The translations under genes and the position numbers were made by a program. This document shows, piece after piece, positions 1,624-63,523 of a stretch of DNA of 64,000 nt; positions within the stretch are counted from its first letter, which is position 1, and each line of letters opens with the position of its first letter. The notes below the pieces were generated by a model that saw only the letters and a list, made by a program, of their open reading frames with translations, did not search any database and had not been told where the DNA came from. The stretch is taken from positions 22,350-86,349 of the forward strand of contig NIVC01002831.1 of the NCBI GenBank assembly GCA_002269645.1, given 5' to 3'. Source of the DNA: Macrostomum lignano (lineage: Eukaryota).

Positions 1624-1723
1624 ATGGCTTGGCGGGATCTTCGCGGCTGGCTGCTCGTATTGTTGTGGGCCACCGCATCTGTTGAAGCTGCCGATGTGGC
1701 CTCGCCCGATGGCTTTGCATTTG
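1624..1723 (+). CDS. Exon 1: signal peptide [22 protein letters not shown] plus short linker
   Basis: ATG in ACCATGG context, basic n-region, hydrophobic core, VEA-A cleavage-like motif, and donor G|GTAAG in phase 1 matching the downstream exons. Confidence 0.75.
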
Positions 1724-31500: not shown

Positions 31501-32432
31501 GATTTCCTTTCAGCTTCTGTGAGATCTGGAGAAATTTTGAATGTTTTCTCTGCATCTTCAGTCTCTTCTTTGCTACCAGACTCGGATTTATCTGCTACTT
31601 CTTCGACGACAATGCAGGTCTCTCCTCTGCAATCTAGAGGGGTGAAGGAACCAACTAACGAACCTTTCTTGATGGTCAGGTCTCTGTTCGAGTTCGAGTT
31701 GATAATATTGATGTACATGCCTTCATTCTTTATTAAATCAACAGTTCTAGCAGCCAAGAGTCCTGGGATTCTTTTGTTCGACTGGACTAGTCCTGGTGCC
31801 ATTGACTGAGTTGACATCTTTGGTGCAATGGAAATAGTTGCTGCTTGTCCTGGTTTTAGCTGGACAGTTTCAGTTGCGATGATCTTGCAGCTTCTCTGAA
31901 CTTCTGTTGTTTTTCTAGTTGGGAAACTTCTGTTCTGATTATTAAATGTGATCATGCCTTCTGCTGGATGGATAGATACATTGAAATTAGTAAAGAAATC
32001 ACATCCTAGGATGACTGAATGCTGAATGTCTTTGCAGATGATGACTTCTTGCTGACAGACAATATCTCCAAAATTAAATTTGATTGTCATTTCTCCTAAT
32101 ACAGAAAGCTGTTTACCATTTGCAGCTTGTAATTTGACATTAGAAGCTCTTACTAGGTACTTTGACTTGTTAATTAAACTTGAATTTATGATTGTAGCTG
32201 AAGCACCGGTATCTATTAGACATGGAATATTTTTGCCAAAGAATTTAGTAGAAACGTACATAACATTAGTTGACATACAGTTTACATTTACAGTTACTGG
32301 TTCTGGCACTTGGTCTTTCTCCTCAGAATTTGGGCCACTCAATGATGAGGCTGGGGTCTGGCCCCTGATCCAGCCTGTGTCAAGTTTGGGCACACTCTTT
32401 GAACATGTCCAGGTTGACCACATCTGAAGCAA
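28593..32432 (-). CDS. Gypsy pol polyprotein (protease, RT, RNase H, integrase)
   Basis: LIDTGAS protease; YIDD RT; DTDAS...RELLA RNase H; H-H-C-C zinc finger, D-D35-E core and GPF motif of integrase. No stops over 1279 codons. The ORF-track start is a TTG, so expression is probably by frameshift from gag. Confidence 0.97.
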   Translation of the reverse strand: MLQMWSTWTCSKSVPKLDTGWIRGQTPASSLSGPNSEEKDQVPEPVTVNVNCMSTNVMYVSTKFFGKNIPCLIDTGASATIINSSLINKSKYLVRASNVKLQAANGKQLSVLGEMTIKFNFGDIVCQQEVIICKDIQHSVILGCDFFTNFNVSIHPAEGMITFNNQNRSFPTRKTTEVQRSCKIIATETVQLKPGQAATISIAPKMSTQSMAPGLVQSNKRIPGLLAARTVDLIKNEGMYINIINSNSNRDLTIKKGSLVGSFTPLDCRGETCIVVEEVADKSESGSKEETEDAEKTFKISPDLTEAERKSVSDILDEYSDIFSRDGKLGRTALLKHSINTGTAMPVRETLRRAALPTIKEQKLIQQMLDDKVIQPSTSPWAAPVILVKKKDGSSRFCIDFRKLNAATKPDAFPVPRIDDMLDALANNVYFSALDLQAGYWQVEMEEKDREKTAFVCHHGLFEFNVMPFGLRNAPSTFQRLIQMVLQGLNWEACLAYIDDVIVMGKTLDIHNERLKQVFERLRAANLRLKPSKCNFAAKSLKILGHVITPQGIAVDDEKIDSIKRWPTPTNQKDVRSFLGLSSYYRRFIKDYSKISEPLRVLTTDKKFTWTDEAEQSFIRLKSALTSAPILALPIMTGEDSEFVLDTDASDFAIGCVLSQQQNGEEKVIAYGSRVLSTAEKNYCVTRRELLAVVEFVKKFRSYLAPKKFTIRVDHQALTYLLQFKEPNGQLARWIESLQEFNFEILYRPGKLHSNADALSRRCTRPCESCRPSKAISDAECQTDEDQTVAAVLSRRKQTLVPRKSESEDESELIDEAEQSETEEEPSMRALQLQDPGIGPVFRKLANGKTAFETGERDRMSPESLSLMSKADELCFINGVMHYLFKTKPVLVLPQCKRESFIKEIHELGHFSVEKTRTSVKKRAYWPKLALDVELFVRSCIPCQRSRPTSITRGPLQPIATGFPMHRIGIDIVKVATSRQGNNRLLTIVDYFTKWAELIPIPDERANTVAKAIFDVWISRWGAPHIIHSDRGSNVDGKVIKSLCKIFDIQKTRTTYFHPQCDGLVERFHRTLHSVLRCYLQTVEPEDWQDVIPHCLLAYRSTVHSSTGFTPHFLMTGREVTLPLDIVYRLAEPASTAVTFASSTKESLLKAFEAVRESVDLAQRRQKRYYDRKSKKKGFKVGSLVWIFIPPSVLRQREPRWSVKHHAPWTGPFRVTRKLTSLTYEVKSIDEHQKVKIVNVEKMKRYIEPRRQEGLWQDEEADEREQEPEESVEEEWVIV

Positions 32433-33571
32433 GTGATCTGTTGATACCTTGTTGCTTGCTGATTAGGATATTTCTGTTGTAGCTTAAAGTTGTTACTTGA
32501 CGGCTGATTTGACTTTGGTTGGTTCTGCATAAATTTCTGCTGCTGGTAATACTTTGGTTCTGGCTGGTTACCTTTTGGTGGTAATGATTGCTTATTTTGA
32601 TGGCTTTCAGGCTGTACTAAGGAGACTTGCTGACTACTCACTGGTGCTTTTGCCAAGAGTTGCTGTGTCTCACGGACTTGTTGTGCAATCTGCAAGGCCT
32701 GTTCTGCTGTATCCAAGTTGGTGAGATTTGATAGATGCTCCATGACCTTGAGGTCATTGATGCCAGTTATGAACTGATCTAAGATCATGGTTTGCACAAC
32801 TTCAGTAGCAATTGCATCTGGGTAGGCCTGGATAGCCAGGTTTTGTAAAGCAGTAAGAAATTGCTCAAATGTCTCTGTTGGTTTCCTAGATAGATTTCTA
32901 AGTTCACGGCGTAGAACAACATTGCTTTTCTCACCATGGCGGCCTCGGAGAAATTCTGTGCATTCCAAGAAAGTGACATTTGGAATATTTTCTAATGGAG
33001 TGTTGACAGGCACACCATGCGTTACATAAATAGTTGAGAGCCACGAGCGATAAGTACAAAATGCTGATCCTAAGAATGCTGATAAAGTTTGAATTTTAAT
33101 TGCTTCAGTTAAATTTGAAAACCTACTGATGTAGCTTTCAATCCGGCATAGGAAATCCGCAAAATTTTCTTTTCCATTAAATGGCATTGGCTTTGGAATT
33201 GGCGGCAATTGAATTTGCATAGCTTGGTACTTAGATTCAATAGGTTGCAAAAGATGACTAGCAACTGGTAAAGAGTTAATTGGATATTGATTAGGCCTTG
33301 AATAGTCTACCGGATTTGTAACAGAAATTGAATCACATTCTTGGTTTGTTTGAGTTACTATTTTAGGAGCTTCAACCTTGGATTTAATTGGCTGAGCACT
33401 GTTATTAGCACTTTTAGATGGACACAAGTGTTCAGTAGCAACTGATGATAATGGCACTTGCTGACTATTTGCCTTGTTTTTAGTAGTAGACCTTGTCTTT
33501 GGTTTGCTAGTATTTGAAGCACTTTTTGTCTTTGTTAATTTGCCTGTAGGCACTACTTTCTTTGGTGGCAT
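32339..33571 (-). CDS. Gypsy gag
   Basis: 410 aa with a capsid-like region (PFNGKENFADFL...LTALQNLAIQAYP...LDQFITG) and a CX2CX4HX4C knuckle (CFRCGQPGHVQRVC). Confidence 0.95.
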   Translation of the reverse strand: MPPKKVVPTGKLTKTKSASNTSKPKTRSTTKNKANSQQVPLSSVATEHLCPSKSANNSAQPIKSKVEAPKIVTQTNQECDSISVTNPVDYSRPNQYPINSLPVASHLLQPIESKYQAMQIQLPPIPKPMPFNGKENFADFLCRIESYISRFSNLTEAIKIQTLSAFLGSAFCTYRSWLSTIYVTHGVPVNTPLENIPNVTFLECTEFLRGRHGEKSNVVLRRELRNLSRKPTETFEQFLTALQNLAIQAYPDAIATEVVQTMILDQFITGINDLKVMEHLSNLTNLDTAEQALQIAQQVRETQQLLAKAPVSSQQVSLVQPESHQNKQSLPPKGNQPEPKYYQQQKFMQNQPKSNQPSSNNFKLQQKYPNQQATRYQQITCFRCGQPGHVQRVCPNLTQAGSGARPQPHH

Positions 33572-42402: not shown

Positions 42403-43508
42403 ATGGCCGCCGTGGCTGCGTGGCTTCCCTTTGCCAGGGCGGCGGCCATAGGCTGGGTGCCGGTGGCCCAGGGCCCGATGCCGCCGCCCCCGCTGCGAGA
42501 TGAGGATCACAAATCGGACGAGAAGCTGATCATCAGCGTCTCCGGGCGCAAGTTTGTCACTTGGCGCAACACGCTGGAGAAGTTCCCGGACACTCTGCTC
42601 GGCAGCGATGAGAAGGAGTACTTCTACGATGAGGACAGCAAGCAGTACTTCTTCGACCGAGACCCGGACCTGTTCCGCCACATCCTGGCCTACTACCGCA
42701 CCGGCAGGCTGCACTATCCCAAGAATGAGTGCATCATGGCCTACGATGAGGAGCTGGCCTTCTTCGGCATCATGCCGGACATCATGGGCGACTGTTGCTA
42801 CGAGGACTACAGGGATCGCAAGCGGGAGAATAACGAGCGCCTGTTTGACGACAAGGACTCCGATGCCGAGAACGCCATGCCGCACAGCACGCCTAGGGAG
42901 AAGCTCTGGCGCGCGTTCGAGAATCCCCAGTCTTCGACGGTAGCATTGGTTGTTTACTACGTGACGGGCTTCTTCATTGCCGTATCCGTTCTCGCTAACG
43001 TGTTTGAGACCATCCCGTGCGGAGTTGAGCCCGGCACTAATTTGAGTCCGGCATGCGGAGACCGCTTCTCAGTGGCATTCTTCTGCTTGGACACGGCCTG
43101 CGTGCTCATCTTCACTGTGGAATACCTGGCCAGGCTGTACGCGGCCCCCCAGCGGCTGAAGCATCTGCGCGCAGTGATGAGCGTCATCGATATCGTGGCT
43201 ATCCTGCCTTATTATATCGGACTGTTCATGCCGGATAATAAGGACCTGAGCGGAGCTTTCGTCACGCTAAGGGTTTTTCGAGTGTTTCGCATCTTCAAGT
43301 TTTCCAGGCACTCCATGGGACTTCGAATTCTGGGCTACACTTTGAAGTCGTGCGCTTCTGAACTTGGTTTCCTATTGTTCTCCATGACAATGGCAGTTAT
43401 CATCTTCGCTACCGTGATGTATTATGCAGAGAAGAATCAACCTAAAACAGGCTTTGTATCAATACCAGCGGCCTTCTGGTACACTATAGTCACCATGACA
43501 ACGCTGGG
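42403..43508 (+). CDS. Shal: Shal/Kv4 voltage-gated K+ channel, coding exon 1 (N-terminus, T1, S1-S5, pore helix)
   Basis: [18 protein letters not shown] Kv4 N-terminus, T1 with HX5CX20CC, S4 [16 protein letters not shown], ends TTLG|GTGAGT in phase 2. Confidence 0.98.
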
Positions 43509-44678
43509 GTGAGTATGTGCTAAAATTGTTTTTAATATGAATAGATAAAATCGCAAAATTCTTGTTCTATTCTTGTTCTAAATATCCAATTTGTGAAGTA
43601 CCAAACGGGATTATTTTCTGTCTTTCATTTCTAATCTATTAGCTTCAGCTTCGTCTACCATCGTAAATGTTATTCTAAATTTTCAGCCATTATTTTGCTA
43701 ATGCATTGGCTTTGCTACTGCAATTTTTGCGCTCAATAAATTTATCAGCACCTATTGAAGTGGAACCACTTCGTACACAGTGTGGATAGATGCATAATTT
43801 ACTAGGTCTCCGCTCCTCTTTGGGATAGGGTGCAGTTTTTTGGGGTCTGAAGAATGCTTAGTAGAAGCCTGCTGCTGACTGAGCTTGACTAAAGCCTGCA
43901 TAGATTTGCTGTTTGTGCCGTGCAAATTCATCTTGGCTCGCAGTCGATTAATGAATTGATGCAAGCGGCCAGTGAAGGCCGGATAGTTTAATGAGTTCGT
44001 GTGCTTTTTTTCTAGGCCAGCCCTCGTTCAAACAGTCTTTTCTCGACCTCTCCCCTGGTGCTGAGTGAGCGCTTGGTCCGCCCTATATTTGTACAAATTT
44101 GGTTCAGTGTACTTGCAGACTAGAGCTGAAGCTGCATTATTCATTGTAAAAGCAATGAGTCTTTTGTTAATCGACCCTGCTTATCCTGGTCACTTATTTA
44201 TCGTGTCAAACAGATTAATTAACCTTGTTGGTCATCAATTTAATCGATAGGTTGAGCAGGCGCAGAACTTACGGCGAGTGCAGTTTTGAAATCATACACA
44301 AGAGTATGATAAATCAGGTTCAATATTACTATGTATATTAAATAGTAAAGCTTGTGCACTTGTCACTGCTCTACTGGTGTGAAATAGTTACTGATCAAAC
44401 AAACAAACAAACCTTAGGCGCCTGACAGCCGCTAGAAATCCAGGTCTAGATTTTTCCATTACATGCGGGCGCGAGGTGAGCTTCTAGTAAAATAGGCTAA
44501 GCCTGGCCTCTCCACACCGTCTGATTTGGTCAGTGCGAATTATTTACAAGACGCCTCCTGTCTGTCCAGGATTTTTCCAGCTGCCCTGACCGACACGCAT
44601 GCATGATGGAATACTGCTCTTGTCTAGTATAGGTGTGGTGAAGAATTTTATGATGCACTTGTCAAGTATGGTGCAGTT

Positions 44679-46670
44679 AGTCCAGCTTCAATTGAATTCA
44701 TCTCTCCAGTTTCTGCGTAGAATCAGAGTTGTTTGACCGGCCTTCAATGGCTTCAGCCGCTAGTCCAGCTTCAATTGAATTCATCTCTCCAGTTTCTGCG
44801 TCGAATCAGAGTTGTTTGACCGGCCTTCAATGGCTTCAGCCGCTAGCCCAGCTTCAATTGAATTCATCTCTCCAGTTTCTGCGTCGAATCAGAGTTGTTT
44901 GACCGGCCTTCAATGGCTTCAGCCGCTAGCCCAGCTTCAATTGAATTCATCTCTCCAGTTTCTGCGTAGAATCAGAGTTGTTTGACCGGCCTTCAATGGC
45001 TTCAGCCGCTAGCCCAGCTTCAATTGAATTCATCTCTCCAGTTTCTGCGTAGAATCAGAGTTGTTTGACCGGCCTTCAATGGCTTCAGCCGCTAGCCCAG
45101 CTTCAATTGAATTCATCTCTCCAGTTTCTGCGTAGAATCAGAGTTGTTTGACCGGCCTTCAATGGCTTCAGCCGCTAGTCCAGCTTCAATTGAATTCATC
45201 TCTCCAGTTTCTGCGTCGAATCAGAGTTGTTTGACCGGCCTTCAATGGCTTCAGCCGCTAGCCCAGCTTCAATTGAATTCATCTCTCCAGTTTCTGCGTC
45301 GAATCAGAGTTGTTTGACCGGCCTTCAATGGCTTCAGCCGCTAGCCCAGCTTCAATTGAATTCATCTCTCCAGTTTCTGCGTCGAATCAGAGTTGTTTGA
45401 CCGGCCTTCAATGGCTTCAGCCGCTAGCCCAGCTTCAATTGAATTCATCTCTCCAGTTTCTGCGTAGAATCAGAGTTGTTTGACCGGCCTTCAATGGCTT
45501 CAGCCGCTAGTCCAGCTTCAATTGAATTCATCTCTCCAGTTTCTGCGTCGAATCAGAGTTGTTTGACCGGCCTTCAATGGCTTCAGCCGCTAGTCCAGCT
45601 TCAATTGAATTCATCTCTCCAGTTTCTGCGTCGAATCAGAGTTGTTTGACCGGCCTTCAATGGCTTCAGCCGCTAGCCCAGCTTCAATTGAATTCATCTC
45701 TCCAGTTTCTGCGTCGAATCAGAGTTGTTTGACCGGCCTTCAATGGCTTCAGCCGCTAGCCCAGCTTCAATTGAATTCATCTCTCCAGTTTCTGCGTCGA
45801 ATCAGAGTTGTTTGACCGGCCTTCAATGGCTTCAGCCGCTAGCCCAGCTTCAATTGAATTCATCTCTCCAGTTTCTGCGTCGAATCAGAGTTGTTTGACC
45901 GGCCTTCAATGGCTTCAGCCGCTAGCCCAGCTTCAATTGAATTCATCTCTCCAGTTTCTGCGTAGAATCAGAGTTGTTTGACCGGCCTTCAATGGCTTCA
46001 GCCGCTAGCCCAGCTTCAATTGAATTCATCTCTCCAGTTTCTGCGTCGAATCAGAGTTGTTTGACCGGCCTTCAATGGCTTCAGCCGCTAGCCCAGCTTC
46101 AATTGAATTCATCTCTCCAGTTTCTGCGTAGAATCAGAGTTGTTTGACCGGCCTTCAATGGCTTCAGCCGCTAGCCCAGCTTCAATTGAATTCATCTCTC
46201 CAGTTTCTGCGTAGAATCAGAGTTGTTTGACCGGCCTTCAATGGCTTCAGCCGCTAGTCCAGCTTCAATTGAATTCATCTCTCCAGTTTCTGCGTCGAAT
46301 CAGAGTTGTTTGACCGGCCTTCAATGGCTTCAGCCGCTAGCCCAGCTTCAATTGAATTCATCTCTCCAGTTTCTGCGTAGAATCAGAGTTGTTTGACCGG
46401 CCTTCAATGGCTTCAGCCGCTAGTCCAGCTTCAATTGAATTCATCTCTCCAGTTTCTGCGTCGAATCAGAGTTGTTTGACCGGCCTTCAATGGCTTCAGC
46501 CGCTAGTCCAGCTTCAATTGAATTCATCTCTCCAGTTTCTGCGTCGAATCAGAGTTGTTTGACCGGCCTTCAATGGCTTCAGCCGCTAGCCCAGCTTCAA
46601 TTGAATTCATCTCTCCAGTTTCTGCGTCGAATCAGAGTTGTTTGACCGGCCTTCAATGGCTTCAGCCGCT
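44679..46670. repeat. 83-bp tandem array, 24 copies, in Shal intron 1
   Basis: 1992 bp = 24 x 83. Only two variable positions seen (AGTCC/AGCCC and GCGTA/GCGTC). Confidence 0.97.
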
Positions 46671-46749
46671 CATTCTAAGGTTTTAAAATAATCGACAACA
46701 ATATTCATGTTTCTTCGGCCTATTTCCGTGTTCTTCTTGGCACATAGGC

Positions 46750-47024
46750 CAGATGTGCAACCGACAGCTCAGCCGTAGCTATTGCGCGGCGCATCTGAAG
46801 GCTGCGTACGGCTGTTCAGTCCAAGGACTGGGGGTCGCCACGCACAGCCTCAATTACCCCAGCTAATGCTGGCACCCATTTTACAGCTGGTTGAACTGAA
46901 GCAATGCAGAGTTAAGTGTCTTGCTCAAGGACACAGATTTTTCTCAGTGGGTCGAGAATGGAACCCCCGACCTTCAAGTCGTGAGTCCGACGCTCTAAGC
47001 CTCTAACCTCTAGGCTACAACCCC
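46750..47024 (-). mobile_element. tRNA-derived SINE with CORE-like central domain, copy 1
   Basis: Minus strand shows a tRNA-like head with A/B boxes, then GTGTCCTTGAGCAAGACACTTAAC...CTGTAAAATGGG resembling the MIR CORE block. Homologous to 54489-54754. Confidence 0.8.
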
Positions 47025-47399
47025 CTCTTGGCACAAGGAACAGGCTTTGACACAACCATGGCTATGATTAGTTTTGCTACTTTATTGAAATACCTTTTAA
47101 AATCAGTTTCGATTTAATTTTTAATTTATTATGCTCTTCAACAGTGATTAGCCGTCAGCTTTGCTAAATTACTCGTAATTACTCTACAAACAGCTGTACT
47201 GCTAGTGTATCACTTTTCAGCTAATTAAGACAGTTCATAACAAATAAGGATCCCCTGATGGGCTGGTACTAGAACAGTCTAGTGCTTTTGTTAGGCAGCA
47301 GACAGGAGGGCAGCGACCCAGGCTGGATTTCAAGTGCAGTCACATTAATTTGGGACTAGACTGGAATCTCGGCTTACCTCTGCTCCTGCAATTAACGCC

Positions 47400-47625
47400 C
47401 TTGAGGCCCAACCCCCAAGGCACAGGGAAGTGTACATGGCTAACGATAATTAAAGTTAGAGCCGCTGTACACCTGTGTGAGTGTGTGCCTGACCTGTGCG
47501 TATGACTGCGTACGTATCCGCGCGCTTGTGTGCCTGCTCAGACGAGTCTGTGGAATGGGTAGCAATGCCTCTTGCCGGTTGTGTGACCATGTCGCTTAAA
47601 GTGCGCCAGGTCGTACACAGTCTCC
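47400..47625. repeat. Diverged dispersed repeat related to 50865-51040
   Basis: Shared blocks CCAACCCCCAAGGCA, GCCGCTGTACA, GGAATGGG and GCGCCAGG in the same order. Confidence 0.55.
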
Positions 47626-52163: not shown

Positions 52164-52432
52164 GTGAGAATTTTTCCATTGATTATAATGATAGCTACAT
52201 TTGCTGTAATGCTTAGTTTAGATATACACTTCCACTACTATTATTAGTATATTATTTAACTATTTTTGATAGATTATTAATTTTCGTAGACTTTTTAGTT
52301 GACTGGCGCAACAAGTTTTTGTCTAGTAATTTCGAGATAAAATAATTGAACTATTTAGCATTCGAACGTTAAAACCTTTTCTTGTTGTTTGCATTTACCT
52401 GAGTGACGTTTAAAATGAGTAGCAATATGCTT

Positions 52433-53643
52433 AGCCTCATACCAGTCAGAGTGCTCGCTATGGAATATGATGGAGCTGTTATTGTGCTCAGCCTCATGCC
52501 AGTCAGAGTGCTCGCTATGGAATATGATGGAGCTGTTATTGTGCTCAGCCCCATGCCAGTCAGAGTGCTCGCTATGGAATATGATGGAGCTGTTATTGTG
52601 CTCAGCCTCATGCCAGTCAGAGTGCTCGCTATGGAATATGATGGAGCTGTTATTGTGCTCAGCCTCATGCCAGTCAGAGTGCTCGCTATGGAATATGATG
52701 GAGCTGTTATTGTGCTCAGCCTCATGCCAGTCAGAGTGCTCGCTATGGAATATGATGGAGCTGTTATTGTGCTCAGCCTCATGCCAGTCAGAGTGCTCGC
52801 TATGGAATATGATGGAGCTGTTATTGTGCTCAGCCTCATGCCAGTCAGAGTGCTCGCTATGGAATATGATGGAGCTGTTATTGTGCTCAGCCTCATGCCA
52901 GTCAGAGTGCTCGCTATGGAATATGATGGAGCTGTTATTGTGCTCAGCCTCATGCCAGTCAGAGTGCTCGCTATGGAATATGATGGAGCTGTTATTGTGC
53001 TCAGCCTCATGCCAGTCAGAGTGCTCGCTATGGAATATGATGGAGCTGTTATTGTGCTCAGCCCCATGCCAGTCAGAGTGCTCGCTATGGAATATGATGG
53101 AGCTGTTATTGTGCTCAGCCTCATGCCAGTCAGAGTGCTCGCTATGGAATATGATGGAGCTGTTATTGTGCTCAGCCTCATGCCAGTCAGAGTGCTCGCT
53201 ATGGAATATGATGGAGCTGTTATTGTGCTCAGCCTCATGCCAGTCAGAGTGCTCGCTATGGAATATGATGGAGCTGTTATTGTGCTCAGCCTCATGCCAG
53301 TCAGAGTGCTCGCTATGGAATATGATGGAGCTGTTATTGTGCTCAGCCCCATGCCAGTCAGAGTGCTCGCTATGGAATATGATGGAGCTGTTATTGTGCT
53401 CAGCCTCATGCCAGTCAGAGTGCTCGCTATGGAATATGATGGAGCTGTTATTGTGCTCAGCCTCATGCCAGTCAGAGTGCTCGCTATGGAATATGATGGA
53501 GCTGTTATTGTGCTCAGCCTCATGCCAGTCAGAGTGCTCGCTATGGAATATGATGGAGCTGTTATTGTGCTCAGCCTCATGCCAGTCAGAGTGCTCGCTA
53601 TGGAATATGATGGAGCTGTTATTGTGCTCAGCCTCATGCCAGT
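52433..53643. repeat. 57-bp tandem array, 21 copies plus a partial, in Shal intron 4
   Basis: 1211 bp = 21 x 57 + 14; nearly invariant (CTCA/CCCA variant). Confidence 0.97.
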
Positions 53644-55043: not shown

Positions 55044-57266
55044 CTGGGCGCTTCTGTCTACTTGGTTTTTGCTACTTATGATTACCTCAATCGTTTGTTG
55101 TACACATTGACATGCGGTGTATTGTCTTGGTATTGATTGATTTTAATCTTTCTTTTTGAGTTGGGCTTCTAATTTAAGCAGATTCTAATGAGCTTCTAAT
55201 GAGCTCTATTTCACCCAGCTGTGATAGCATAGCAACCATGCAGCGAATTAGGCATATTGCTAATCTATTTATTTATTTATTTTCAGAGATGCATGTCATT
55301 TTAACTGTTGCTGAGCTCATCTCTGTGTGCATATATCAGATGTATTTTCGCATATTTATTTATCGCTAGCCAACAATCAAATTTCAATTCGATATCAATT
55401 CGCACAACAAATATATTTATCTTCTTCACCGATGTTTGCATTGTTAGTTATAATACTTATGTGTAATAATTGTTCTGAATATTTTAGTTTGCTGCTGATG
55501 AACTAACAGTATTTTACCCTGCATTGAACGCAAATTGTGTTCTTAACGTTGCAATGATTCCTACATTATATTGATACTTCTATTATGCTGATAGAGTGGC
55601 CAGGTAATGAAAATTATTTCCTTTTAGCTGACTTGCACATCCTCCTGTTATCAATAAATTTACACCGTAATAGCCTAATTAGGTCAGTTCTCTGTTTATT
55701 TTTTCATTTTAGTGAATTTTTCAAGTACTTGTTTGGCAAGCATTAACTTTGTGTGTTGCTGTGTGTTTCTATAGTAGACTTTTTCAAGCAAGCCTCTCTG
55801 ACACTTCAATTTCTGTTTGTGTTTGAATGAATATCATTGTCTTCAGTTGACTTGATTATGTTATACTTTACTTATGTATACTTTACCCTGCTTAACCATA
55901 TGTAGTGGACGAAAATAGCAAAAACTTTTTTACAGTCTTATACTCTACTTTCCTCATACGTTATGTAAATATGTGCATTCCTAAACATTTATCTGTGAAC
56001 AAAGTCCATCTTGACCCACTGTTCGATCTTTATCGTATTGCACTGTTCGTACCAGAATGTAATCCTAGTCCGTTTTTTTTAAAACTTGATGGTATTTTCC
56101 CTCACCTTTTTTGATTATTTATATATCCGTCATCGTTTTGACAAATATAACCTTGATGACAACTGCACATTTTTCGTTTTCATTTTTAATAGATTTCATA
56201 GTTTAGATTATAGCATAGCCTTTTGCGGCCCATTTGGGCCTATCCGCTCTGTAGTTTTAACCCTAGATGTTCATTTAGACATGACTGTCACAAGCAGTGA
56301 AGACGAGAGCAATGCTTCATTTGCAACTGCTGCGGCGGAGCAAGATCAGCCCCAGAATCGTGGACCATATGCTAGACTGTCAAACAGAGACCAAAGACTT
56401 CTGCTCGAAGCGGAGTTTTGACCATACTAAAAATGCTCTTTTTGTTATAGTTAAGCAGATTGAATTTTTTACGTCACCTTGTGTTAGTACAGTGAATAGA
56501 TTGCTTTGCGCAGCTGTAACTAATGATTGGGTTTCATAGCCGCTACCATTGCTACCATTACTTAGCAAGCATATCTTGGATTAAATTCAATGCGAGTAAG
56601 CCCAAATGGGCTGCAAAAAGCTGTATTGATTTCGTCAGTCAAGTTGATAATAAGGCCGATCAAGTAAATGCCATGAAACAGCACACTCGGCCATAGACAG
56701 TACAGCCAATTAAGTGGACAGCTCGCAATTCCAAGCTGCTCTCTCCCACAGACAGCAAGCCAAGCCAGCTGTTTAAAGCTGTTCTCTCTGGTTAAATGAC
56801 AATCAAGTAGAGAATTTCAAAGCAAGTATTGTGGCCCAGTTGAAAGCATACAGATTAAAGACAGGTTGGACCTTAGACTACGCAAATTTCCGACTGTGAA
56901 ACACAGCTGATAGACATATACGACTAGAATTGGAAATGAATAAAAGCGCCCGATAGCATATAAAAATTGGGTTGGGCCATAGACCATACAGATTTCCGAC
57001 TCTGAAACACAAGCGTCGTGGCAAACACCCTAACCTAGAATTTCAGGCATAGAGAATTTTACTTCTAGGCCATAAAACGTTGAGTCACGCTTAGTTTTGG
57101 GCATAGACTTAAGGCTAAGCCCCAAAAATCCTTATTTATCCCCTTTTAGGGGAGCCCATTGGCGGAGAATGGCCAGTGAAGGCTTTCGTCGTATTTTAAG
57201 TCATTAGTGTGAGTAATTTAGCGTGATGATTCGTGTACTAAGCATTATGAATATCCTCTCGCATTC

Positions 57267-58393
57267 ATGCTAGCTCAAATCGCGCACTTCGCCATCCAGC
57301 GCACTAGCAGACAGACTAGACAGGCAATGGCTCAGACTCAAATTTCTAAGTTCTTTAAAACAATGCCAAAAGATGGCGAGAAATCTTCCTCGTCCAAGCA
57401 GGACGCTGACCAAACTTCGACGCCCGATCAAGAAAGAAAGGATGAAAAAGTTGAGTCAAGGTCCAATTGGCTACAGAATCAGCAGGAAAGCCGCAAGTCC
57501 ATGGATAAGCGACCTTTGAGCGCCGACAAAGACGAGGACAAAGACTGCTCCGGGGAGATGAAAAATTCCGAGCCGAAGCGTCCCCGCGTATCAACTGAGA
57601 CACCGCCGCGGCCGCAGCAGAATCTCAACGCGTTTCTAGCTTCGCCATCCAGCTTTGGAAAGGAGAACCAGAGCCAGTTTCTGAGCGCCCAGCCAGCCGC
57701 TGTTCAGTCGCTGGTGGTTGACTTCGGTATCAGCTGGATGCAGGCCCTGAAGCCTGAGCTCACTAAGACTTACTTTGTCCAGCTGGCTGAATTTGTTCGG
57801 GCCGAGCGCTCCAGCAAGACAATCTACCCTCCGCCTGGGAGGTCTTCTCCTGGACTCGCGCCTGCCGCCTGCAGGAGGTGAAGGTGGTCATCCTGGGCCA
57901 GGACCCCTATCACGGCCCTAACCAGGCCCACGGGCTCTGCTTCTCGGTCCGCCGGCCGACCGTGCCGCCTCCCAGCCTGCTCAACATTTACAAAGAGGTG
58001 TCGAACAATTTTCCGGACAAGTTTCAGCATCCAGGACATGGCGATCTGACTGGCTGGGCTGAGCAAGGTGTGCTACTGCTCAACGCTGTGCTCACTGTTC
58101 GCCGCGGTGAGGCGAATTCGCATCAGGGCCGCGGCTGGGAGACGTTCACTGACGCCGTGGTCGCTACGCTCAACTCTCGCTGCGCAGGCCTAGTATTCAT
58201 ACTGTGGGGCAACTATGCCCAGAAAAAGGGCGCCAAAATTGATAAGCGCAAGCACAAGGTCATTTGCGGCGCTCATCCGTCGCCTCTGGCCGTTAATCGG
58301 GGCGGCTTCTTTGGCAAAATGTACTTTAAGGAAGCCAACGACTATTTGAAGTCGGTTGGAAAATCGACCATCGATTGGTGCCACTTGCCTTGA
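57267..58393 (+). CDS. UNG: Uracil-DNA glycosylase (family 1), intronless, with one apparent 1-bp deletion near 57838
   Basis: GQDPYH, VLLLNAVLTV, WGNYAQKK and HPSPL motifs. Restoring one base in CCTGGGAGGTC gives YPPPG(E/Q)VFSWT...VKVVILGQDPY. Confidence 0.93.
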
Positions 58394-59189
58394 CTGGTTT
58401 AAAGCTTCCAATTGGATTGTTTAGTTGCATTTTTTCGTTTTTATTCTTCGTAAACATCACTTGTTTATGGGTGAAAAATCAGTTTAAATAATAAAATTAT
58501 TAAAGGTAACACACTATGCAGAATGTAATCATTTTCAAAATAAATCATATTTTTATATACATATATCCACTAGTTTTTTTCGATGAAGCTTATATCTTTT
58601 GCAAAACAAAATCATCCCCTACACGATTTTTTATCTTTCACTGGAATATTTGGCACACAACTAAATAAGCACTTTATGAAGCTCTCTTCTAACGGCAATT
58701 CGCCAACGAATCTACTTTGCATCTGACTGCTCTGGTATTGGTTTATTTTTTTCTGTGTTTTAAAGCATTTTATTATGCAAATTTGAGCTGATAGTTTATA
58801 TATTAAAGCAGCGCAATGCTATGCAATAGGGTCCGCTTATCTTTGTGACCGTTTGTTCCTGTACTTCTCTAGTGGCGCTGATTTGCGTATTAAACAAAAA
58901 TATACGTTTGATTTTACCACCTTTTGGTTACGTATATAGCGTTTCTTGTGTTTGTATGTCTTTAAAATGTCATTAACTAGTATTTTTATTTTTTATAGCA
59001 AGGCTTAAAAGCTCTATTCAATTCGCCATCTTGCAGATCCTCATTCGAGTTATACAGACTCTTAATGCTTAAACAGTTAATTTTGGTTGGCCTTTTTTGA
59101 AAGGAAATCAAAGCTACTTGCTAAATAACGCTTATAATTAATTTTCATGCCTGCGGCAGAATCGGGCGGCGTCCATCAGCTGGGGGAGC

Positions 59190-60544
59190 ATGCGCACTCA
59201 CCTGGCCAAGACGCGTCACGTGGCTCTGGTGCACGGCCTGCTAGGCTGGGGCCCAGGCCAGCTGGTTCTGCCTAGCGGCGCCGTCTCCTACTGGGAGACG
59301 GCTGTGGATTCTCGCACGGACACCAGCGGCCTGACAGTCTTGGAGGCCGGTGTTGGCCCAATCAGTTCGCAGCATGACCGAGCATGCGAGCTATACGCGC
59401 AGCTTCGCGGATGCCGTACAGACTATGGCGAAGAGCACTCGGCCTTGCATGGCCACGAGCGATGGGGCCCGGACTTTACTGGCCGAGGCCTCCACCCAGA
59501 CTGGTGCGCTGAGCAGCCAATCCATCTAGTTGGACACTCGGCCGGTGGAAACACTTCTAGAACTCTCCAGCGCCTGTTGGCTGATGATTTCTGGTCGGAG
59601 GGCACCGAGTCCAATTGGGTCACATCCGTAACTTGCCTGGCCAGTCCGCTCAACGGCTCGCCCGCTGTCTATATGTTCGGCTGCGACGAAGCTACCGGCT
59701 TATTTCGTTGGCCGCGCATGCTGAACGTTTTTAGTCGCCTATTGCCGCGCAACTGGATTCTGGAACATTGGGGCCTATCCGACACTGATGTTGCTTATCC
59801 ATCTCGACTGCGCTCCAGCGGAATTTTCGCTGGAACTGATAACCTGGCTTACGATTTGTCCATTCAAGGCTGCTCTCGCATCAATTATTCGGGATTCCTT
59901 GATGACTTTTTATCCACGTACTATCTGTCCTGCGTTGCAAAGTGCACAGCGCCAGGAACTTCTTGTTCGAACTGTGCGACTCCAAGTCGAGACTGTCGCT
60001 CATTTTTTCTGCCCTCTTGTCGCTATATGTGCTCGCGCAGAGTGCGTATTAAACATCGGAACCATTCTACAGATGCTGATCATCGGTTACATCAGGAGTT
60101 TTACCGTCCAGACCTCGACCTAGATTGGTGCCACAACGACGGCCTAGTACCAATTGCCAGTCAGCGTTATCCTATTGGCGGCTCGCACTCTATTGGCGGC
60201 GAGTTGAGTTCGGAGCAGCCAGAACAGGGTCGCTGGTACTACACAAACGCTACTGATCTGGCTGGCGTACAGCCGAATCTGTCCTGGGACCACGCCGACT
60301 TTACAGTGCTGCGTAGTCCTCTTCTTAGCTTGGCTTTCCAGCCAATAGCAGTATTTGCCGATTTCTGCGATGCGGCCGTAAGGGCAGTCTAGCGCCAGCT
60401 CGTGCTCCATTGAAAGATGCGGAGCTTAATACAAACGAAAAATCTGACCCCGATGCTGATGCTGAATCTGGCGGGACAGTGACACGTTGCATGCAGCGCT
60501 CCTTCTATGAGCGGCTGTACCGCCATCTGAGCGGCCTGTCTTAG
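59190..60544 (+). CDS. Alpha/beta-hydrolase lipase resembling bacterial family I.5/I.6, intronless; probable 1-bp deletion near 60328
   Basis: VHGLLGW, HDRACELYAQLRG...DYGEEHSALHGHERWG, GHSAG nucleophile, SPLNGS, AYDLS, HNDGLVP and WDHADF. A shifted frame open from 60329 ends QRSFYERLYRHLSGLS* at 60544, which looks like the family C-terminus. The start codon is uncertain. Confidence 0.88.
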
Positions 60545-61110: not shown

Positions 61111-63523
61111 ATGCCTAAAATGCCGCGTCAGCAATCGTCGTCCTCTGAGGACTCATCATCCGAAGATGAGAAAGTGAAAAAGCCAACAACCCCTGGAGGC
61201 AAAGTGATCCCGAGTCCCAGCAAGACTGGATCAGCTGCAAAAAAACCACAGAAGCGTCCTGTGCCTGCCGAATCATCAAGCGATTCTGATTCTGATTCGT
61301 CTGACGCTAAGCCGCCAGTCAAAAAGGCTGCGCCTGTCAAGCCCGTTGGTAAGAAGGTAGTGGCTGAGGACTCATCAACCGACTCGTCTTCTGAGAACGA
61401 GAAGCCACCAGCCAAGAAGCCAGCTGCTGCCACTCCTGCAGCCAAGCCAGCTGCTGCCACTCCTGCAGCCAAGACACCCAAAAAGACACCGGTAAAAAAG
61501 CAGGAGTCGTCGTCAAGCGACTCGTCTTCTGAGGACGAGAAGCCACCAGCCAAGAAGCCAGCTGCTGCCACTCCTCCAGCAAGACACCTAAAAAGACACC
61601 GGTAAAAAAGCAGGAGTCGTCATCAAGCGACTCGTCTTCTGAGGACGAGAAGCCACCAGCCAAGAAGCCAGCTGCTGCAACTCCTCCAGCCAAGACACCA
61701 AAAAGACACCGGTAAAAAAGCAGGAGTCGTCATCAAGCGACTCGTCTTCTGAGGACGAGAAGCCACCAGCCAAGAAGCCAGCTGCTGCTACTCCTGCAGC
61801 TGCAGCCAAGCCAGTCACAAAAACACCGGCAAAGAAGCAGGAGTCGTCATCAAGCGACTCGTCTTCTGAGGACGAGAAGCCACCAGCCAAGAAGCCAGCT
61901 GCTGCTACTCCTGCAGCTGCAGCCAAGCCAGTCACAAAAACACCGGCAAAGAAGCAGGAGTCGTCATCAAGCGACTCGTCTTCTGAGGACGAGAAGCCAC
62001 CAGCCAAGAAGCCAGCTGCTGCTACTCCTGCAGCCAAGCCAGCTGCCACTCCTGCAGCCAAGACACCCAAAAAGACACCGGTAAAAAAGCAGGAGTCGTC
62101 GTCAAGCGACTCGTCTTCTGAGGACGAGAAGCCACCAGCCAAGAAGCCAGCTGCTGCCACTCCTCCAGCCAAGCCAGCCACAAAGACACCGGTAAAGAAA
62201 AAGGAGTCGTCATCAAGCGACTCTTCTTCTGAGGATGAGAAGCCAACAGCTAAGAAAGTAGCTCCTGCTGCTGCCACTCCTGCAGCCAAGACACCCAAAA
62301 AGACACCAGTAAAGAAGCAAGATTCTTCATCCAGTGATTCTTCGGATGATGAACAGCCGCCACCAAAAAAGATCGCTTACTAACAACGCCAATAAAAAGT
62401 CGCCCGTGTCAGAAAAGCTGCCAAACGGAAAGCATATTGTGCCAAAAGCGACGCATTGCCTTCTGCTAAGCAATCTGGATCCTTCCATCACTCGAAAGGA
62501 CCTGTCCAACTTTTTGGACGACAAAGACATTGCTCGTCTTGACGCAGGTTTAGTCAGTGCTCCGATTGCAATGATCTGCTTTGAAAGTAAATCTGATGCA
62601 GATGCTGCGGCCTCTAAGTGCCAAAATGCGTCTCTAAAGAATCGACAGTTCAGCATTAACACTTTGTCCGGACCGGTGGATCATCTCCAAGTACTACTTG
62701 GAGACGGTGCACCGAAGGTTTCAGCTCCAATGACGAATGACTTTTCTCAGAAAGACAAATCTCGCGAAGAACTGCGCGGACAGGCTCGCTCTGTTATTTT
62801 GCTAAATGTGCCTGCCGATGCAGAGGAATCAGATGTGCGCGCTGCTTTTCCAGGGGGTTCTCGCTACAATGTTAAGACTCGTCCCGGTTCTGACACAGGC
62901 GTCTGCTTTGTGGATTTTGATTCAGAGGCTGACTGCTCTGCCGGTTTTGACGAATTCCGCGGCGTTGGACAATTCGGCGGTCGCGAGGTTGCTGTCGCCT
63001 TCGTTGCGCCAAGGCCGAAAGGAAGTCATTTGGTGGCGGTGGCGGGGGCGGTCCTGGTTCAGATAATCCTCCGTCAAAACTGTTGGCGTGTTTAATCTTC
63101 CGTACAGTGCCACTGTCGAACAGTTGTGGAGTATTTCCCTAAAGCACAAGATCTGTTTATTCCTAAGGCGATGATGGCCGCAGCCGCGGATTTGCTTTCG
63201 TCACGTTTGACTCGATTGATAGCGCCAGCGAGGCTGTCAACGCTGGACTGACTCTGGACGGTCGGCAGACCCGGATCGAGTATCGCGAAGATCGCAGTGG
63301 AGGCGGACGTGGCGGTGGCCGTGGCGGCGGCCGCGGTGGATTTGGCGGTGGCCGTGGTGGCTTTGACAGTGGGCGTGGCGGTGGCCGAGGTGGCGGCTTT
63401 GGCGGTGGTCGTGGCGGTCGTGGTGGAGGCCGCGGTGGACGTGGAGGCTTTGGCGCTCCCAAGCCTCGCATAGAGATCGATACAGCCAAGCAGAGCCGCA
63501 AGTTGGATTCTGACTCGGATTAA
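61111..63523 (+). CDS. Nucleolin-like protein (acidic Ser/Lys-rich repeats, three RRMs, RGG tail) with about seven single-base indels
   Basis: N-terminal KKQESSSSDSSSEDEKPPAKKP repeats; RRMs at ~62450-62670, ~62785-63010 and ~63075-63290 (RNP1 RGFAFVTF); GGRGGF tail ending ...KLDSDSD*. Frame breaks near 61580, 61699, 62365, 63020, 63078, 63127 and 63168. Confidence 0.88.
61370..62350 (+). repeat. Coding tandem repeats (~110-125 bp units) of the nucleolin-like acidic domain
   Basis: Repeated GAGTCGTCATCAAGCGACTCGTCTTCTGAGGACGAGAAGCCACCAGCCAAGAAGCCAGCT blocks. Confidence 0.9.

What the first reader, a model, noticed from the sequence alone, without database searches (positions are those of the whole stretch)
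59190..60544. Bacterial-type zinc-site lipase embedded among animal housekeeping genes: candidate horizontal transfer
Seen: an intronless ORF with the motif order of Geobacillus/Staphylococcus lipases. It includes matches to the structural zinc ligands of Geobacillus L1/T1 lipase (D in HDRAC, the H-x5-H of HSALHGH, D in AYDLS) and a Ser-Asp-His triad (GHSAG, NDG, DH). Knowledge: this family is typical of Firmicutes, with homologues in plants and oomycetes, and I do not know it as a standard animal family. It is flanked by eukaryotic UNG and nucleolin-like genes, which argues against simple contamination. Inference: acquired from a bacterium or a microbial eukaryote and wired into a host transcription unit.
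Basis: partly seen in the sequence, partly recalled or inferred. Interest (0 to 1): 0.72.

Follow-up and report, generated by a model that had tools for sequence, protein, structure and literature searches.

The report
Bacterial-type lipase gene in a flatworm
The flatworm Macrostomum lignano carries a zinc-site lipase gene of a mostly bacterial type, found in no other named animal, lying among ordinary animal genes; it looks like an old horizontal transfer, but the donor is unresolved and this copy has a one-base frame break.

Summary
Window 59190-60392 encodes a 400-aa Lip_C (PF24708) lipase (E 5e-32). It has the Ser-Asp-His triad and all four zinc ligands of Geobacillus T1 lipase. The AlphaFold model matches only family I.5/I.6 lipases strongly (Foldseek about 1e-25).

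Three corrections:
- The reading frame does not reach 60544 in this window. A T3/T4 homopolymer at 60335-60337 shifts it. Two sibling contigs (98% and 99.3% identical) read through and add the family's conserved C-terminal helix.
- The fourth zinc ligand is the Asp of TDN, not of AYDLS.
- The closest relatives are not Firmicutes enzymes. They belong to a subfamily without signal peptides (Chloroflexota, Cyanobacteria, Proteobacteria; also oomycetes, a giant-virus MAG and a phage-like contig).

The organism is Macrostomum lignano. Contamination is excluded: three contigs share the UNG and nucleolin-like flanks, and composition is host-like. There are three monophyletic paralogue lineages. One sits in a paralogous Shal-lipase-nucleolin block. 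Two have introns, none at shared positions.

No other named animal appeared in three large searches. Ancient horizontal acquisition is well supported. The donor (bacterium, protist or virus) is unresolved. This is a new case of a known kind; I found no published report.

The parts
59190..60337 (+). Lipase coding sequence, main part (codons 1-382 plus 2 nt). It is intronless and holds the alpha/beta-hydrolase core, the zinc subdomain and the catalytic triad.
   Evidence: ORF listing. Pfam Lip_C 5e-32. PDB sequence hits. Alignment to T1 lipase. AF2 model of the sibling copy with pLDDT 81.4 and pTM 0.85. Foldseek top 43 hits are all family I.5/I.6 lipases.
60335..60337 (+). T-run frameshift site. 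It is TTT here and TTTT in sibling copies L001 and L036. In this window the frame then runs into TAG at 60390-60392.
   Evidence: Pairwise DNA alignments. In L036 this is the only difference between window positions 58746 and 61200.
60338..60544 (+). Displaced 3' end of the lipase coding sequence (69 codons including the stop). It contains a lineage-specific, low-confidence linker and the family-conserved C-terminal helix QRSFYERLYRHLSGLS.
   Evidence: Translation. Identity with the C-termini of P0001 and P0258. The helix is conserved across 39 homologues. pLDDT is 84-97 for the helix and 37-50 for the linker.
59143..59189 (+). 5' boundary and leader. The annotated transcript of the sibling copy starts at 59150, directly after 'ttttcatg'. 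The same site in copy L001 reads 'ttttccag', which is the published SL trans-splice acceptor motif [T/C]TNCAG.
   Evidence: P0258 starts LRQNRAAS, which corresponds to window 59152. Three-copy comparison. Motif and SL sequence from PMC8629364. That trans-splicing occurs here is an inference, not shown.
57270..58393 (+). Upstream neighbour: uracil-DNA glycosylase (UNG). It is single-exon and frame-broken in this window by a G-run indel at 57837-57839. It is intact in L001 and L036.
   Evidence: Pfam UDG 1.5e-17. tblastn finds it in two frames, and the G-run was compared across copies. Called genes of 366 and 374 aa in the sibling loci.
61111..63520 (+). Downstream neighbour: nucleolin-like gene with acidic Ser-rich 111-117-bp repeats followed by an RRM. 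It is split over three frames in this window and is a single 805-aa ORF in L001.
   Evidence: ORFs. RRM_1. Tandem repeats. tblastn against the L001 product.
42403..47548 (+). Further upstream neighbour: exons of a Shal-type (Kv4) potassium channel. This gene family is best known from animals (my own knowledge) and anchors the locus in the host genome. It is also the upstream neighbour of lipase paralogue C on another contig.
   Evidence: Pfam Shal-type, BTB_2 and Ion_trans. DUF3399 genes upstream in L036 and L037. tblastx match of window 47327-47548 to L037 1220-1440.

Best explanation
The feature is one genomic copy of a Macrostomum lignano gene (transcript cluster Mlig020078). It encodes a serine lipase/esterase without a signal peptide, from the Lip_C family (bacterial lipase families I.5/I.6).

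Inferred mechanism, from homology:
- An alpha/beta-hydrolase core carries the nucleophile Ser117 in GHSAG.
- Asp317 (NDG) and His368 (DH) complete the triad.
- A tetrahedral zinc site formed by Asp63, His83, His89 and Asp217 braces the extra subdomain, as in Geobacillus T1 lipase.
- With no leader peptide, the enzyme probably works inside cells on acyl esters. The substrate is unknown.

Origin:
- An ancestor of M. lignano acquired the gene horizontally from a non-animal source. The source was most likely a bacterium carrying the subfamily without signal peptides. A protist or giant virus is possible.
- The gene inserted between a Shal channel gene and a nucleolin-like gene.
- It was then copied with that block and elsewhere, giving three paralogue lineages: A (this window, intronless), B (two introns) and C (at least four introns).
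- It is now expressed as part of a co-oriented, probably SL-trans-spliced gene cluster, UNG-lipase-nucleolin.

The frameshift in this window is most likely a homopolymer error of the PacBio-based assembly rather than a dead gene.
For: Enzyme identity:
- Pfam 5e-32. PDB hits 1e-24 to 3e-30.
- Triad and zinc ligands align to T1 Ser113/Asp317/His358 and Asp61/His81/His87/Asp238.
- The same seven residues are invariant across paralogues A, B and C despite 46-49% overall identity.
- AF2 pTM is 0.85. The top 43 Foldseek hits are all I.5/I.6 lipases at 1e-25 to 1e-22, and the next family scores 1e-7.

Host integration:
- Three contigs of GCA_002269645.1 carry UNG-lipase; the nucleolin-like gene follows in the window and L001, and its start region is present in L036.
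- CDS GC is 55.8%, against 55.5% and 54.2% for the neighbouring genes and 31-33% for intergenic DNA.
- Paralogue B has two GT-AG introns. Paralogue C has at least three mapped introns plus one more. No intron position is shared.
- Paralogue C lies between a Shal C-terminal gene and an RRM/nucleolin-like gene.

Selection:
- dN/dS is 0.23 between copies L036 and L001. There are 11.5 synonymous and 8.5 non-synonymous changes (binomial p about 0.001-0.003).

Foreign origin:
- In a word-indexed search, an exhaustive HMMER search of 1.84 billion representatives and a profile search, the only named animal is M. lignano.
- After the worm's own paralogues (781-558 bits), the next hits (321 bits and below) are 380-400-aa proteins. 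The named ones are Chloroflexota, cyanobacteria, proteobacteria and Acidimicrobiales. Two of the closest sit on clearly bacterial contigs.
- NJ trees give the worm clade 87-100% support, and place it inside the subfamily without signal peptides at 89-95%.

Expression:
- The GenBank gene models of this assembly are derived only from RNA-seq-based transcript assemblies. Names share a prefix when transcripts cluster at 95% identity (PMC5730564). The siblings are Mlig020078.g8 and .g14.

Assembly error:
- This contig also has homopolymer or frame-breaking indels in UNG and the nucleolin-like gene. Both are intact in the siblings.
- Against L036 there are 26 gap openings and 36 substitutions over 10.9 kb.
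Against: - The worm clade is not nested inside any particular bacterial group. It branches near the base of the subfamily on a long branch, and backbone support is 23-43%.
- Its nearest tree neighbours are weakly supported (8-36%). They are a giant-virus MAG protein, an oomycete protein and two unidentified sequences that look protist-derived.
- Only distance (NJ) trees could be built.
- Other Macrostomum species were apparently not represented.
- No RNA-seq reads, protein data or enzyme assays were available. Expression and trans-splicing are inferred.
- The frameshift could be a real null allele on a redundant chromosome copy.
Confidence: 0.75

Rival explanations
1. The donor was a microbial eukaryote or a giant virus, not a bacterium directly. 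The worm eats diatoms and other protists, and a eukaryote-associated branch of the subfamily passed the gene on.
For: - In NJ trees the worm clade's neighbours are a giant-virus MAG lipase (P0042, the same as L040, 33% identity), Lagenidium giganteum (oomycete) and two unidentified sequences, one from run ERR1719362.
- In the first tree this grouping had 88% bootstrap.
Against: - Support fell to 8-28% once paralogue C and Lagenidium were added. This fits long-branch attraction.
- By identity and by profile score the bacterial proteins are clearly closer. Bacterial hits reach 321 bits, against 193 bits for Achlya. Identity in the N-terminal half is 50-58% for the closest hits; a Foldseek/HMMER stretch of the Lagenidium protein is 39% and the giant-virus protein is 33% identical overall.
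Confidence: 0.2
2. Vertical inheritance: this is an ancient eukaryotic or animal gene, kept in Macrostomum and lost in nearly all other animals.
For: - Homologues exist in several eukaryotic lineages (chytrids, oomycetes).
- The worm family is old, with three lineages at 46-54% identity, introns and paralogous synteny.
Against: - No named animal other than M. lignano appears in any search.
- Chytrid and Phytophthora proteins fall in a different branch near Clostridium enzymes, so eukaryotes are not monophyletic.
- None of the introns of paralogues B and C share a position, and paralogue A has none. This fits an intronless ancestor.
Confidence: 0.07
3. Contamination or a chimeric assembly: the lipase belongs to a bacterium or food organism that was mis-joined to worm DNA.
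For: The best non-worm hits are bacterial, and M. lignano cultures contain diatoms and bacteria (my own knowledge).
Against: - The same gene order occurs on three separate contigs that differ by real substitutions.
- GC content is host-like.
- dN/dS is below 1 between copies.
- The paralogues have spliceosomal introns.
- The closest non-worm protein is only about 38-44% identical.
Confidence: 0.01
4. The window copy is a genuine pseudogene or null allele. On this reading, the frameshift that removes the conserved C-terminal helix is real, on a redundant chromosome copy of the hidden-polyploid DV1 line.
For: - The DV1 line carries extra large chromosomes and the assembly is highly redundant (PMC5730564).
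- This contig has frame breaks in three adjacent genes. That could reflect decay of a redundant segment.
Against: - The lipase region is otherwise identical to intact copy L036 over about 2.4 kb.
- The UNG and lipase breaks lie in short homopolymers, and the indel-to-substitution ratio is abnormally high at 26:36. This is typical of residual PacBio consensus error where Pilon polishing fails in multi-copy regions.
Confidence: 0.3

Closest known systems
Bacterial lipase family I.5 (Geobacillus T1/L1/BTL2 thermoalkalophilic lipases) and I.6 (Staphylococcus SAL/SHL); Pfam Lip_C PF24708
   Same: - Same fold (Foldseek E about 1e-25, TM 0.65-0.71 normalised to the target).
- Same motif order.
- Ser-Asp-His triad.
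- All four zinc ligands (Asp61/His81/His87/Asp238 equivalents).
- Conserved C-terminal helix.
   Different: - Only 25-29% identity.
- No signal peptide or pro-region.
- The segment corresponding to the lid helix is shortened.
- Cys/His-rich insert (about residues 255-305) and a roughly 45-residue low-confidence linker before the last helix.
- Encoded in an animal genome.
Uncharacterised Lip_C subfamily without signal peptides, about 380-400 aa (Chloroflexota incl. Promineifilaceae, Calothrix/Symploca, Methylocystis/Bradyrhizobium, Haliangium, Methylobacter)
   Same: - Closest relatives: 36-44% identity overall and 50-58% in the N-terminal 155 residues.
- The same start directly at the first beta-strand.
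- The same HDRACE, GHSxG, DN, NDG, DH and QRxFYxxL motifs.
- One clade with the worm proteins at 89-95% bootstrap.
   Different: - Bacterial genes lie in compact operon-like contexts.
- The worm proteins carry lineage-specific inserts, sit on long branches, and are not nested in any one bacterial phylum.
- No member of this subfamily turned up with a solved structure.
Documented bacterium-to-animal gene transfers (e.g. bdelloid rotifer foreign genes, plant-parasitic nematode cell-wall enzymes, arthropod acquisitions); named from my own knowledge
   Same: The pattern of evidence is the same:
- a gene of a microbial family absent from related animals;
- linkage to native genes;
- host-like composition;
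- intron gain;
- duplication after transfer.
   Different: - The host is a free-living macrostomid flatworm.
- I found no report of this gene.
- The gene was already in place before a block duplication.
- It appears to sit in an SL-trans-spliced multi-gene unit.
Eukaryotic Lip_C proteins of chytrid fungi and oomycetes (Cladochytrium, Phlyctochytrium, Phytophthora, Achlya, Lagenidium)
   Same: Same Pfam family. They show that the family has entered eukaryotes more than once.
   Different: - Chytrid and Phytophthora proteins are secreted-type and group near Clostridium enzymes.
- The Lagenidium protein (two tandem lipase domains) and Achlya hit P0318 (820 aa) score far below the bacterial proteins against the worm profile: 193 against 321 bits.

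Membership tests
Pfam Lip_C (PF24708) / bacterial lipase families I.5-I.6 | Significant match to the family profile above the curated threshold | tested here: met
   111.5 bits against a cut-off of 27, E 5e-32. 36 PDB lipase sequences match at E up to 6e-24.
Pfam Lip_C (PF24708) / bacterial lipase families I.5-I.6 | Catalytic triad: Ser (in a GxSxG elbow), Asp and His at the family positions (T1: Ser113, Asp317, His358) | tested here: met
   GHS117AG, ND317G and DH368 align to the family positions. They are at least 90% conserved in 123 homologues and invariant in all worm paralogues. Triad numbering from PMC6566366.
Pfam Lip_C (PF24708) / bacterial lipase families I.5-I.6 | Zinc site: two Asp and two His (T1: Asp61, His81, His87, Asp238) | tested here: met
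D63, H83, H89 and D217 align to these residues. All are at least 90% conserved in the family. Actual metal binding was not tested.
Pfam Lip_C (PF24708) / bacterial lipase families I.5-I.6 | Three-dimensional fold with the extra zinc subdomain | tested here: met
   AF2 model of sibling copy P0001: pLDDT 81.4, pTM 0.85. Foldseek top 43 PDB hits are all I.5/I.6 lipases, E 1.5e-25 to 8.6e-22. This rests on a prediction, not an experiment.
Pfam Lip_C (PF24708) / bacterial lipase families I.5-I.6 | Secreted enzyme with an N-terminal signal peptide (and a pro-region in staphylococci) | tested here: not met
   The profile match starts at residue 11 and the sequence begins MRTHLAKTRHVALVHG, with no hydrophobic leader. 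The closest bacterial relatives also start directly at the first strand, whereas more distant members carry leaders. No dedicated signal-peptide predictor was available.
Pfam Lip_C (PF24708) / bacterial lipase families I.5-I.6 | Calcium site (T1: Gly286, Glu360, Asp365, Pro366) | tested here: inconclusive
   The region around 286 is replaced by a Cys-rich insert of low model confidence, and the stretch after His368 aligns poorly.
Pfam Lip_C (PF24708) / bacterial lipase families I.5-I.6 | Lipolytic or esterase activity | not testable with these tools
   Needs recombinant protein and assays.
Horizontally acquired gene in an animal genome | Physical linkage to undoubted host genes (not contamination) | tested here: met
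   Shal Kv4, UNG and nucleolin-like genes flank it in the window. UNG lies upstream on two further contigs, and the nucleolin-like gene follows on L001.
Horizontally acquired gene in an animal genome | Absence from other animals with presence in a candidate donor group | tested here: met
   Only M. lignano among named animals. The alien-index style difference is at least 80 natural-log units, using P0004 (E 9.7e-62, on a bacterial contig) against no named animal at E up to 5e-27. Limits: most database entries are unnamed, and other Macrostomum species are apparently not represented.
Horizontally acquired gene in an animal genome | Phylogenetic nesting within the donor group | tested here: inconclusive
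   It lies inside a bacteria-dominated subfamily at 89-95% bootstrap, but is basal and not nested in any phylum. Weakly supported neighbours are a giant virus and oomycetes. Only NJ trees were built.
Horizontally acquired gene in an animal genome | Signs of domestication: host-like composition, introns, purifying selection, expression | tested here: met
   GC content matches neighbouring genes. Paralogues B and C have GT-AG introns. dN/dS is 0.23, p about 0.001-0.003. Expression is inferred only, from the transcript-based annotation.

The most novel reading that the evidence does not exclude
Before an ancient block or genome duplication in the macrostomid lineage, a microbial zinc lipase without a signal peptide entered the genome between a Shal channel gene and a nucleolin-like gene. 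Homologues on a phage-like contig and a giant-virus MAG show that such elements can carry this gene, so one may have been the vector. The gene was then captured into an SL-trans-spliced polycistronic unit with UNG and nucleolin. It diversified into three catalytically intact paralogues that gained introns independently. This would be a flatworm-specific addition to lipid metabolism, and a rare documented case of a foreign gene recruited into an animal operon.
Probability: 0.35. Interest if true: 0.65.

Novelty: new member of a known kind. Interest (0 to 1): 0.5.

Why it matters
- Transfers from microbes into animals are accepted, but well-documented cases are concentrated in a few groups. My literature searches turned up no documented case for free-living flatworms.
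- This case is clean on linkage. There are three contigs, paralogous synteny, and paralogues that differ in intron content. Together these give a natural series for studying how a foreign, intronless gene acquires introns and 5' processing (SL trans-splicing) and joins a multi-gene transcription unit.
- Macrostomum lignano has published transgenesis (PMC5730564) and gene knockdown (PMC12732829), so function is testable.
- It also draws attention to a large, uncharacterised Lip_C subfamily without signal peptides. Its members retain the zinc site, and it occurs in many bacterial phyla, a phage-like contig and a giant-virus MAG.
- It is a caution too. Frame breaks in this window are probably assembly errors, so gene-loss calls from this assembly need read-level checks.

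Tried and rejected
- **Mini-intron to restore the frame.** I considered an intron from GTAAG at 60378 to AG at 60424. I rejected it because both sibling copies read straight through with one extra T.
- **Protist sister group.** P0054 and P0099 grouped with the worm clade at 88% in the first reduced tree. This did not survive adding paralogue C and Lagenidium, when support fell to 8-28%. By identity these sequences are not among the closest. I treat the grouping as long-branch attraction.
- **Shared 'ATGCCTGC' motif.** It occurs upstream of both the lipase and the nucleolin-like gene, but it is not enriched: 6 matches against 2.7 expected, and 6 of 100 shuffles reach 6.
- **SL relic or retrocopy.** I asked whether the sequence upstream of 59150 is a relic of the spliced leader. 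Only the last four bases match, and the upstream DNA is identical in the copy that has CCAG. An RNA-seq polishing artefact at a trans-splice site is more likely.
- **Literature.** Searches for a prior report found nothing relevant: Macrostomum with HGT or with lipase, the gene id, and flatworm HGT.
- **Look-ups that failed.** P0002 and P0284 were not on record by exact sequence.
- **Methods not available.** No maximum-likelihood tree program was available, so only NJ with bootstrap under three rate-heterogeneity settings was run.
Full report
**What is at the coordinates**

An ATG-initiated ORF runs from 59190 to a TAG at 60390-60392, giving 400 aa. It matches Pfam Lip_C (PF24708) at E 5e-32, 111.5 bits against a cut-off of 27. 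It also matches 36 solved Staphylococcus, Geobacillus and Clostridium-type lipase sequences at E 3e-30 to 6e-24. So the match is far beyond chance.

The interval is 1355 nt long. The last 69 codons (60338-60544) are in another frame. They encode ...QRSFYERLYRHLSGLS.

**Organism and sibling copies**

The best database hit (97% identity, 453 aa) is a Macrostomum lignano protein. Its locus, L001 (NIVC01002832), is 98% identical to the window over 10.9 kb. A third copy, L036 (NIVC01002654), is 99.3% identical.

In both siblings the lipase ORF is continuous (1356 nt). They have TTTT where the window has TTT at 60335-60337. Between window positions 58746 and 61200, that single T is the only difference from L036.

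The restored tail contains the C-terminal helix QRxFYxxLxxRLAxL, which is conserved in all 39 closest homologues. It is predicted with high confidence.

The window contig also has other breaks that are absent from both siblings. UNG carries a G-run indel at 57837-57839. The nucleolin-like gene is split over three frames, whereas L001 has one 805-aa ORF.

Against L036 there are 26 gap openings and 36 substitutions. The assembly was built from PacBio reads with Canu and polished with Pilon in a highly redundant genome (PMC5730564). I therefore read the frameshift as a probable consensus error (about 0.7). A real null allele is the alternative (about 0.3).

**Enzyme features**

I aligned the protein to Geobacillus T1 lipase. 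In 400-aa numbering the equivalents are:
- Zinc ligands: D63 = Asp61, H83 = His81, H89 = His87, D217 = Asp238.
- Triad: S117 = Ser113 and D317 = Asp317. WDH368 pairs with the catalytic His in the HMMER alignment to S. aureus lipase.

The ligand and triad lists come from PMC6566366. The true equivalent is the Asp of TDN, and it is conserved.

All seven residues are at least 90% conserved in 123 homologues. They are invariant in all worm paralogues.

An AlphaFold2 model of the intact sibling has pLDDT 81.4 and pTM 0.85. Its top 43 Foldseek PDB hits are all family I.5/I.6 lipases (E 1.5e-25 to 8.6e-22). The next lipase family scores only 1e-7.

Differences from the solved enzymes:
- There is no signal peptide; the domain starts at residue 11.
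- The lid segment is shorter.
- A Cys/His-rich insert and a roughly 45-residue linker both have low model confidence.

**Context**

The window carries, all on the + strand:
- Shal-type Kv4 channel exons (42403-43512, plus a DUF3399-homologous stretch near 47327-47548);
- UNG (57270-58393);
- the lipase;
- a nucleolin-like gene with Ser/acid repeats and an RRM.

Coding GC of the lipase is 55.8%. That matches UNG (55.5%) and the nucleolin-like gene (54.2%), against 31-33% in the intergenic DNA.

Between copies L036 and L001 there are 11.5 synonymous and 8.5 non-synonymous changes. This gives dN/dS 0.23, with a binomial p of about 0.001-0.003 against neutrality.

**A gene family, not a single insertion**

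M. lignano has three lineages:
- **A** (this window; Mlig020078): intronless.
- **B** (P0002/P0121/P0122; 44-49% identity): two GT-AG introns of 513 and 290 nt.
- **C** (P0284/P0285/P0424; 51-54% identity in the N-terminal half): at least three mapped introns plus one more, and an N-terminal low-complexity repeat extension in P0285.

No intron position is shared between B and C. That fits an intronless ancestor.

Lineage C lies between a Shal C-terminal gene and an RRM/nucleolin-like gene (49% identical in the RRM region). So A and C occupy paralogous blocks, and the lipase was in place before that duplication.

The B coding sequence begins exactly at a ...CGCAG acceptor. The M. lignano spliced leader ends in ATG (PMC8629364). 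A leader-supplied start codon would therefore be in frame. This is an inference.

**Transcription unit**

GenBank gene models for this assembly come only from RNA-seq-based transcript assemblies. Transcripts that cluster at 95% identity share a name prefix. Many transcriptional units are polycistronic precursors that are cut at trans-splice and poly(A) sites. The sibling lipase genes are Mlig020078.g8 and .g14.

The annotated 5' end of the sibling lipase corresponds to window 59150. In copy L001 the preceding bases are TTTTCCAG, which is the published acceptor motif [T/C]TNCAG. In the window and L036 they read TTTTCATG, that is, the last four bases of the spliced leader. UNG's annotated start also follows CATTCATG.

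Pilon polishing used RNA-seq reads as well. I therefore suspect an artefact at real trans-splice sites. That would be indirect evidence of trans-splicing.

The gaps between the co-oriented genes are about 756 and 560 nt. These are below the 1-kb operon criterion used for this species.

**Where the family comes from**

- *Window protein search.* After the worm's own proteins, the hits are 36-38% identical proteins of 380-400 aa from metagenomes. Two of the closest lie on clearly bacterial contigs, one with MCP/HSP15/PNPOx genes and overlapping coding sequences, the other a 3.8-Mb contig.
- *GTDB species genomes.* The scan names Calothrix, three Chloroflexia, Methylocystis, other Alphaproteobacteria, a delta-proteobacterium and Haliangium at 33-38% identity. 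Firmicutes come in only at 28-29%.
- *Exhaustive HMMER search of 1.84 billion representatives.* The only matches above 45% identity that extend past the first ~170 residues are the worm's own lineage C; shorter unnamed N-terminal matches reach 45-57%.
- *Profile search with A+B+C.* Worm proteins score 781-558 bits. The next hit scores 321 bits. Named hits are Promineifilaceae, Methylobacter, Acidimicrobiales, Limnocylindrales, Symploca and Bradyrhizobium. The oomycete Achlya scores 193 bits. No other animal appears.
- *Chytrid and Phytophthora proteins.* They form a separate branch near Clostridium enzymes.

NJ trees on 366-378 trimmed columns, with 200-300 bootstraps and three rate settings, give these results:
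- The worm lineages are monophyletic (87-100%).
- They lie inside the subfamily without signal peptides (89-95%).
- They branch near its base on a long branch. Backbone support is 23-43%.
- Weakly supported neighbours (8-36%) are a giant-virus MAG lipase (P0042 = L040), Lagenidium, and two unidentified sequences. One of these comes from a 1.5-kb contig of run ERR1719362. The other comes from a 73%-GC contig.

The donor is therefore unresolved.

**Verdict**

- The horizontal-transfer reading is well supported (about 0.75-0.8 for a non-animal origin). A bacterial donor is the most likely (about 0.5-0.55 overall). A protist or giant-virus route is a live alternative (about 0.2).
- Vertical inheritance with massive loss is unlikely (about 0.07). 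Contamination is excluded.
- I found no prior report of this gene or transfer.
- It is a new case of a known kind of event. Its interest is moderate, raised by the paralogous synteny, the independent intron gains and the probable operon membership.

Noticed in passing
window 57837-57839 (UNG) and 61111-63520 (nucleolin-like): UNG is split into two ORFs by a G-run indel (GGG here, GGGG in both sibling copies). The nucleolin-like gene lies in three frames here but is one 805-aa ORF in L001. The window contig therefore carries several frame-breaking indels in adjacent genes.
   Followed up: yes
window 59143-59150; L001 5960-5968; UNG start (window about 57262-57270): Annotated 5' ends of UNG and the lipase follow genomic '...TTCATG|'. 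The lipase site reads TTTTCCAG, the trans-splice acceptor motif, in one sibling copy. The spliced leader ends in GCATG and the assembly was polished with RNA-seq reads. These may therefore be polishing artefacts that mark real trans-splice sites.
   Followed up: partly
L037 (NIVC01000895.1) 1-14981: Lipase paralogue C lies between a Shal C-terminal (DUF3399) gene and an RRM/nucleolin-like gene. This is paralogous synteny with the window, but no UNG was detected there. This copy of paralogue C also has a frame break relative to P0284, near residues ...AMPP.
   Followed up: partly
L039 (Logan SRR12762296 contig, 22 kb) 8001-9188: One of the closest relatives of the worm lipases (P0459, 305 bits against the worm profile) sits in a phage-like gene array. 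Its neighbours match PHROG virion structural, head decoration and tail fibre families. A lipase of this subfamily may be phage-borne.
   Followed up: partly
L040 (IMGVR GVMAG-S-1016713-147 contig) 5815-7176: A giant-virus MAG contig (29-39% GC, with RING-finger, SNF2-helicase and IBR genes) encodes a 453-aa Lip_C protein with an N-terminal membrane anchor. It is 99% identical to P0042 and 33% identical to the worm protein.
   Followed up: partly
window 28593-33571, minus strand: Long ORFs of an LTR retrotransposon (Ty3/gypsy-like). Matches are a gag zinc knuckle, aspartic protease, RT, RNase H and integrase. The sequence was not printed or assembled.
   Followed up: no
window 6515-8821, plus strand: A 768-aa ORF with reverse transcriptase and RNase H domains, indicating another retroelement.
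   Followed up: no
window 52428-53643 and 44678-46670: Two very regular tandem arrays: a 57-bp unit x 21 copies (99% matches), which creates long spurious ORFs on both strands, and an 83-bp unit x 24 copies (98%). They lie between the Shal exons and UNG. The 57-bp array is shared with the sibling contigs.
   Followed up: no
L004 (NIVC01000939.1) 7800-8000: Lipase paralogue B starts exactly at a ...TTCGCAG acceptor, so the ATG that ends the spliced leader would be the in-frame start codon. Just upstream is a roughly 21-bp tandem repeat (GGATCGAATCCCATAGATTAA).
   Followed up: partly
window 59182-59186: A G-run in the lipase leader is GGGGG here and in L036 but GGGG in L001. Only in L001 would a leader-supplied ATG at 59150 be in frame with the main ATG at 59190. 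In the window it would open a 40-codon overlapping upstream ORF.
   Followed up: no
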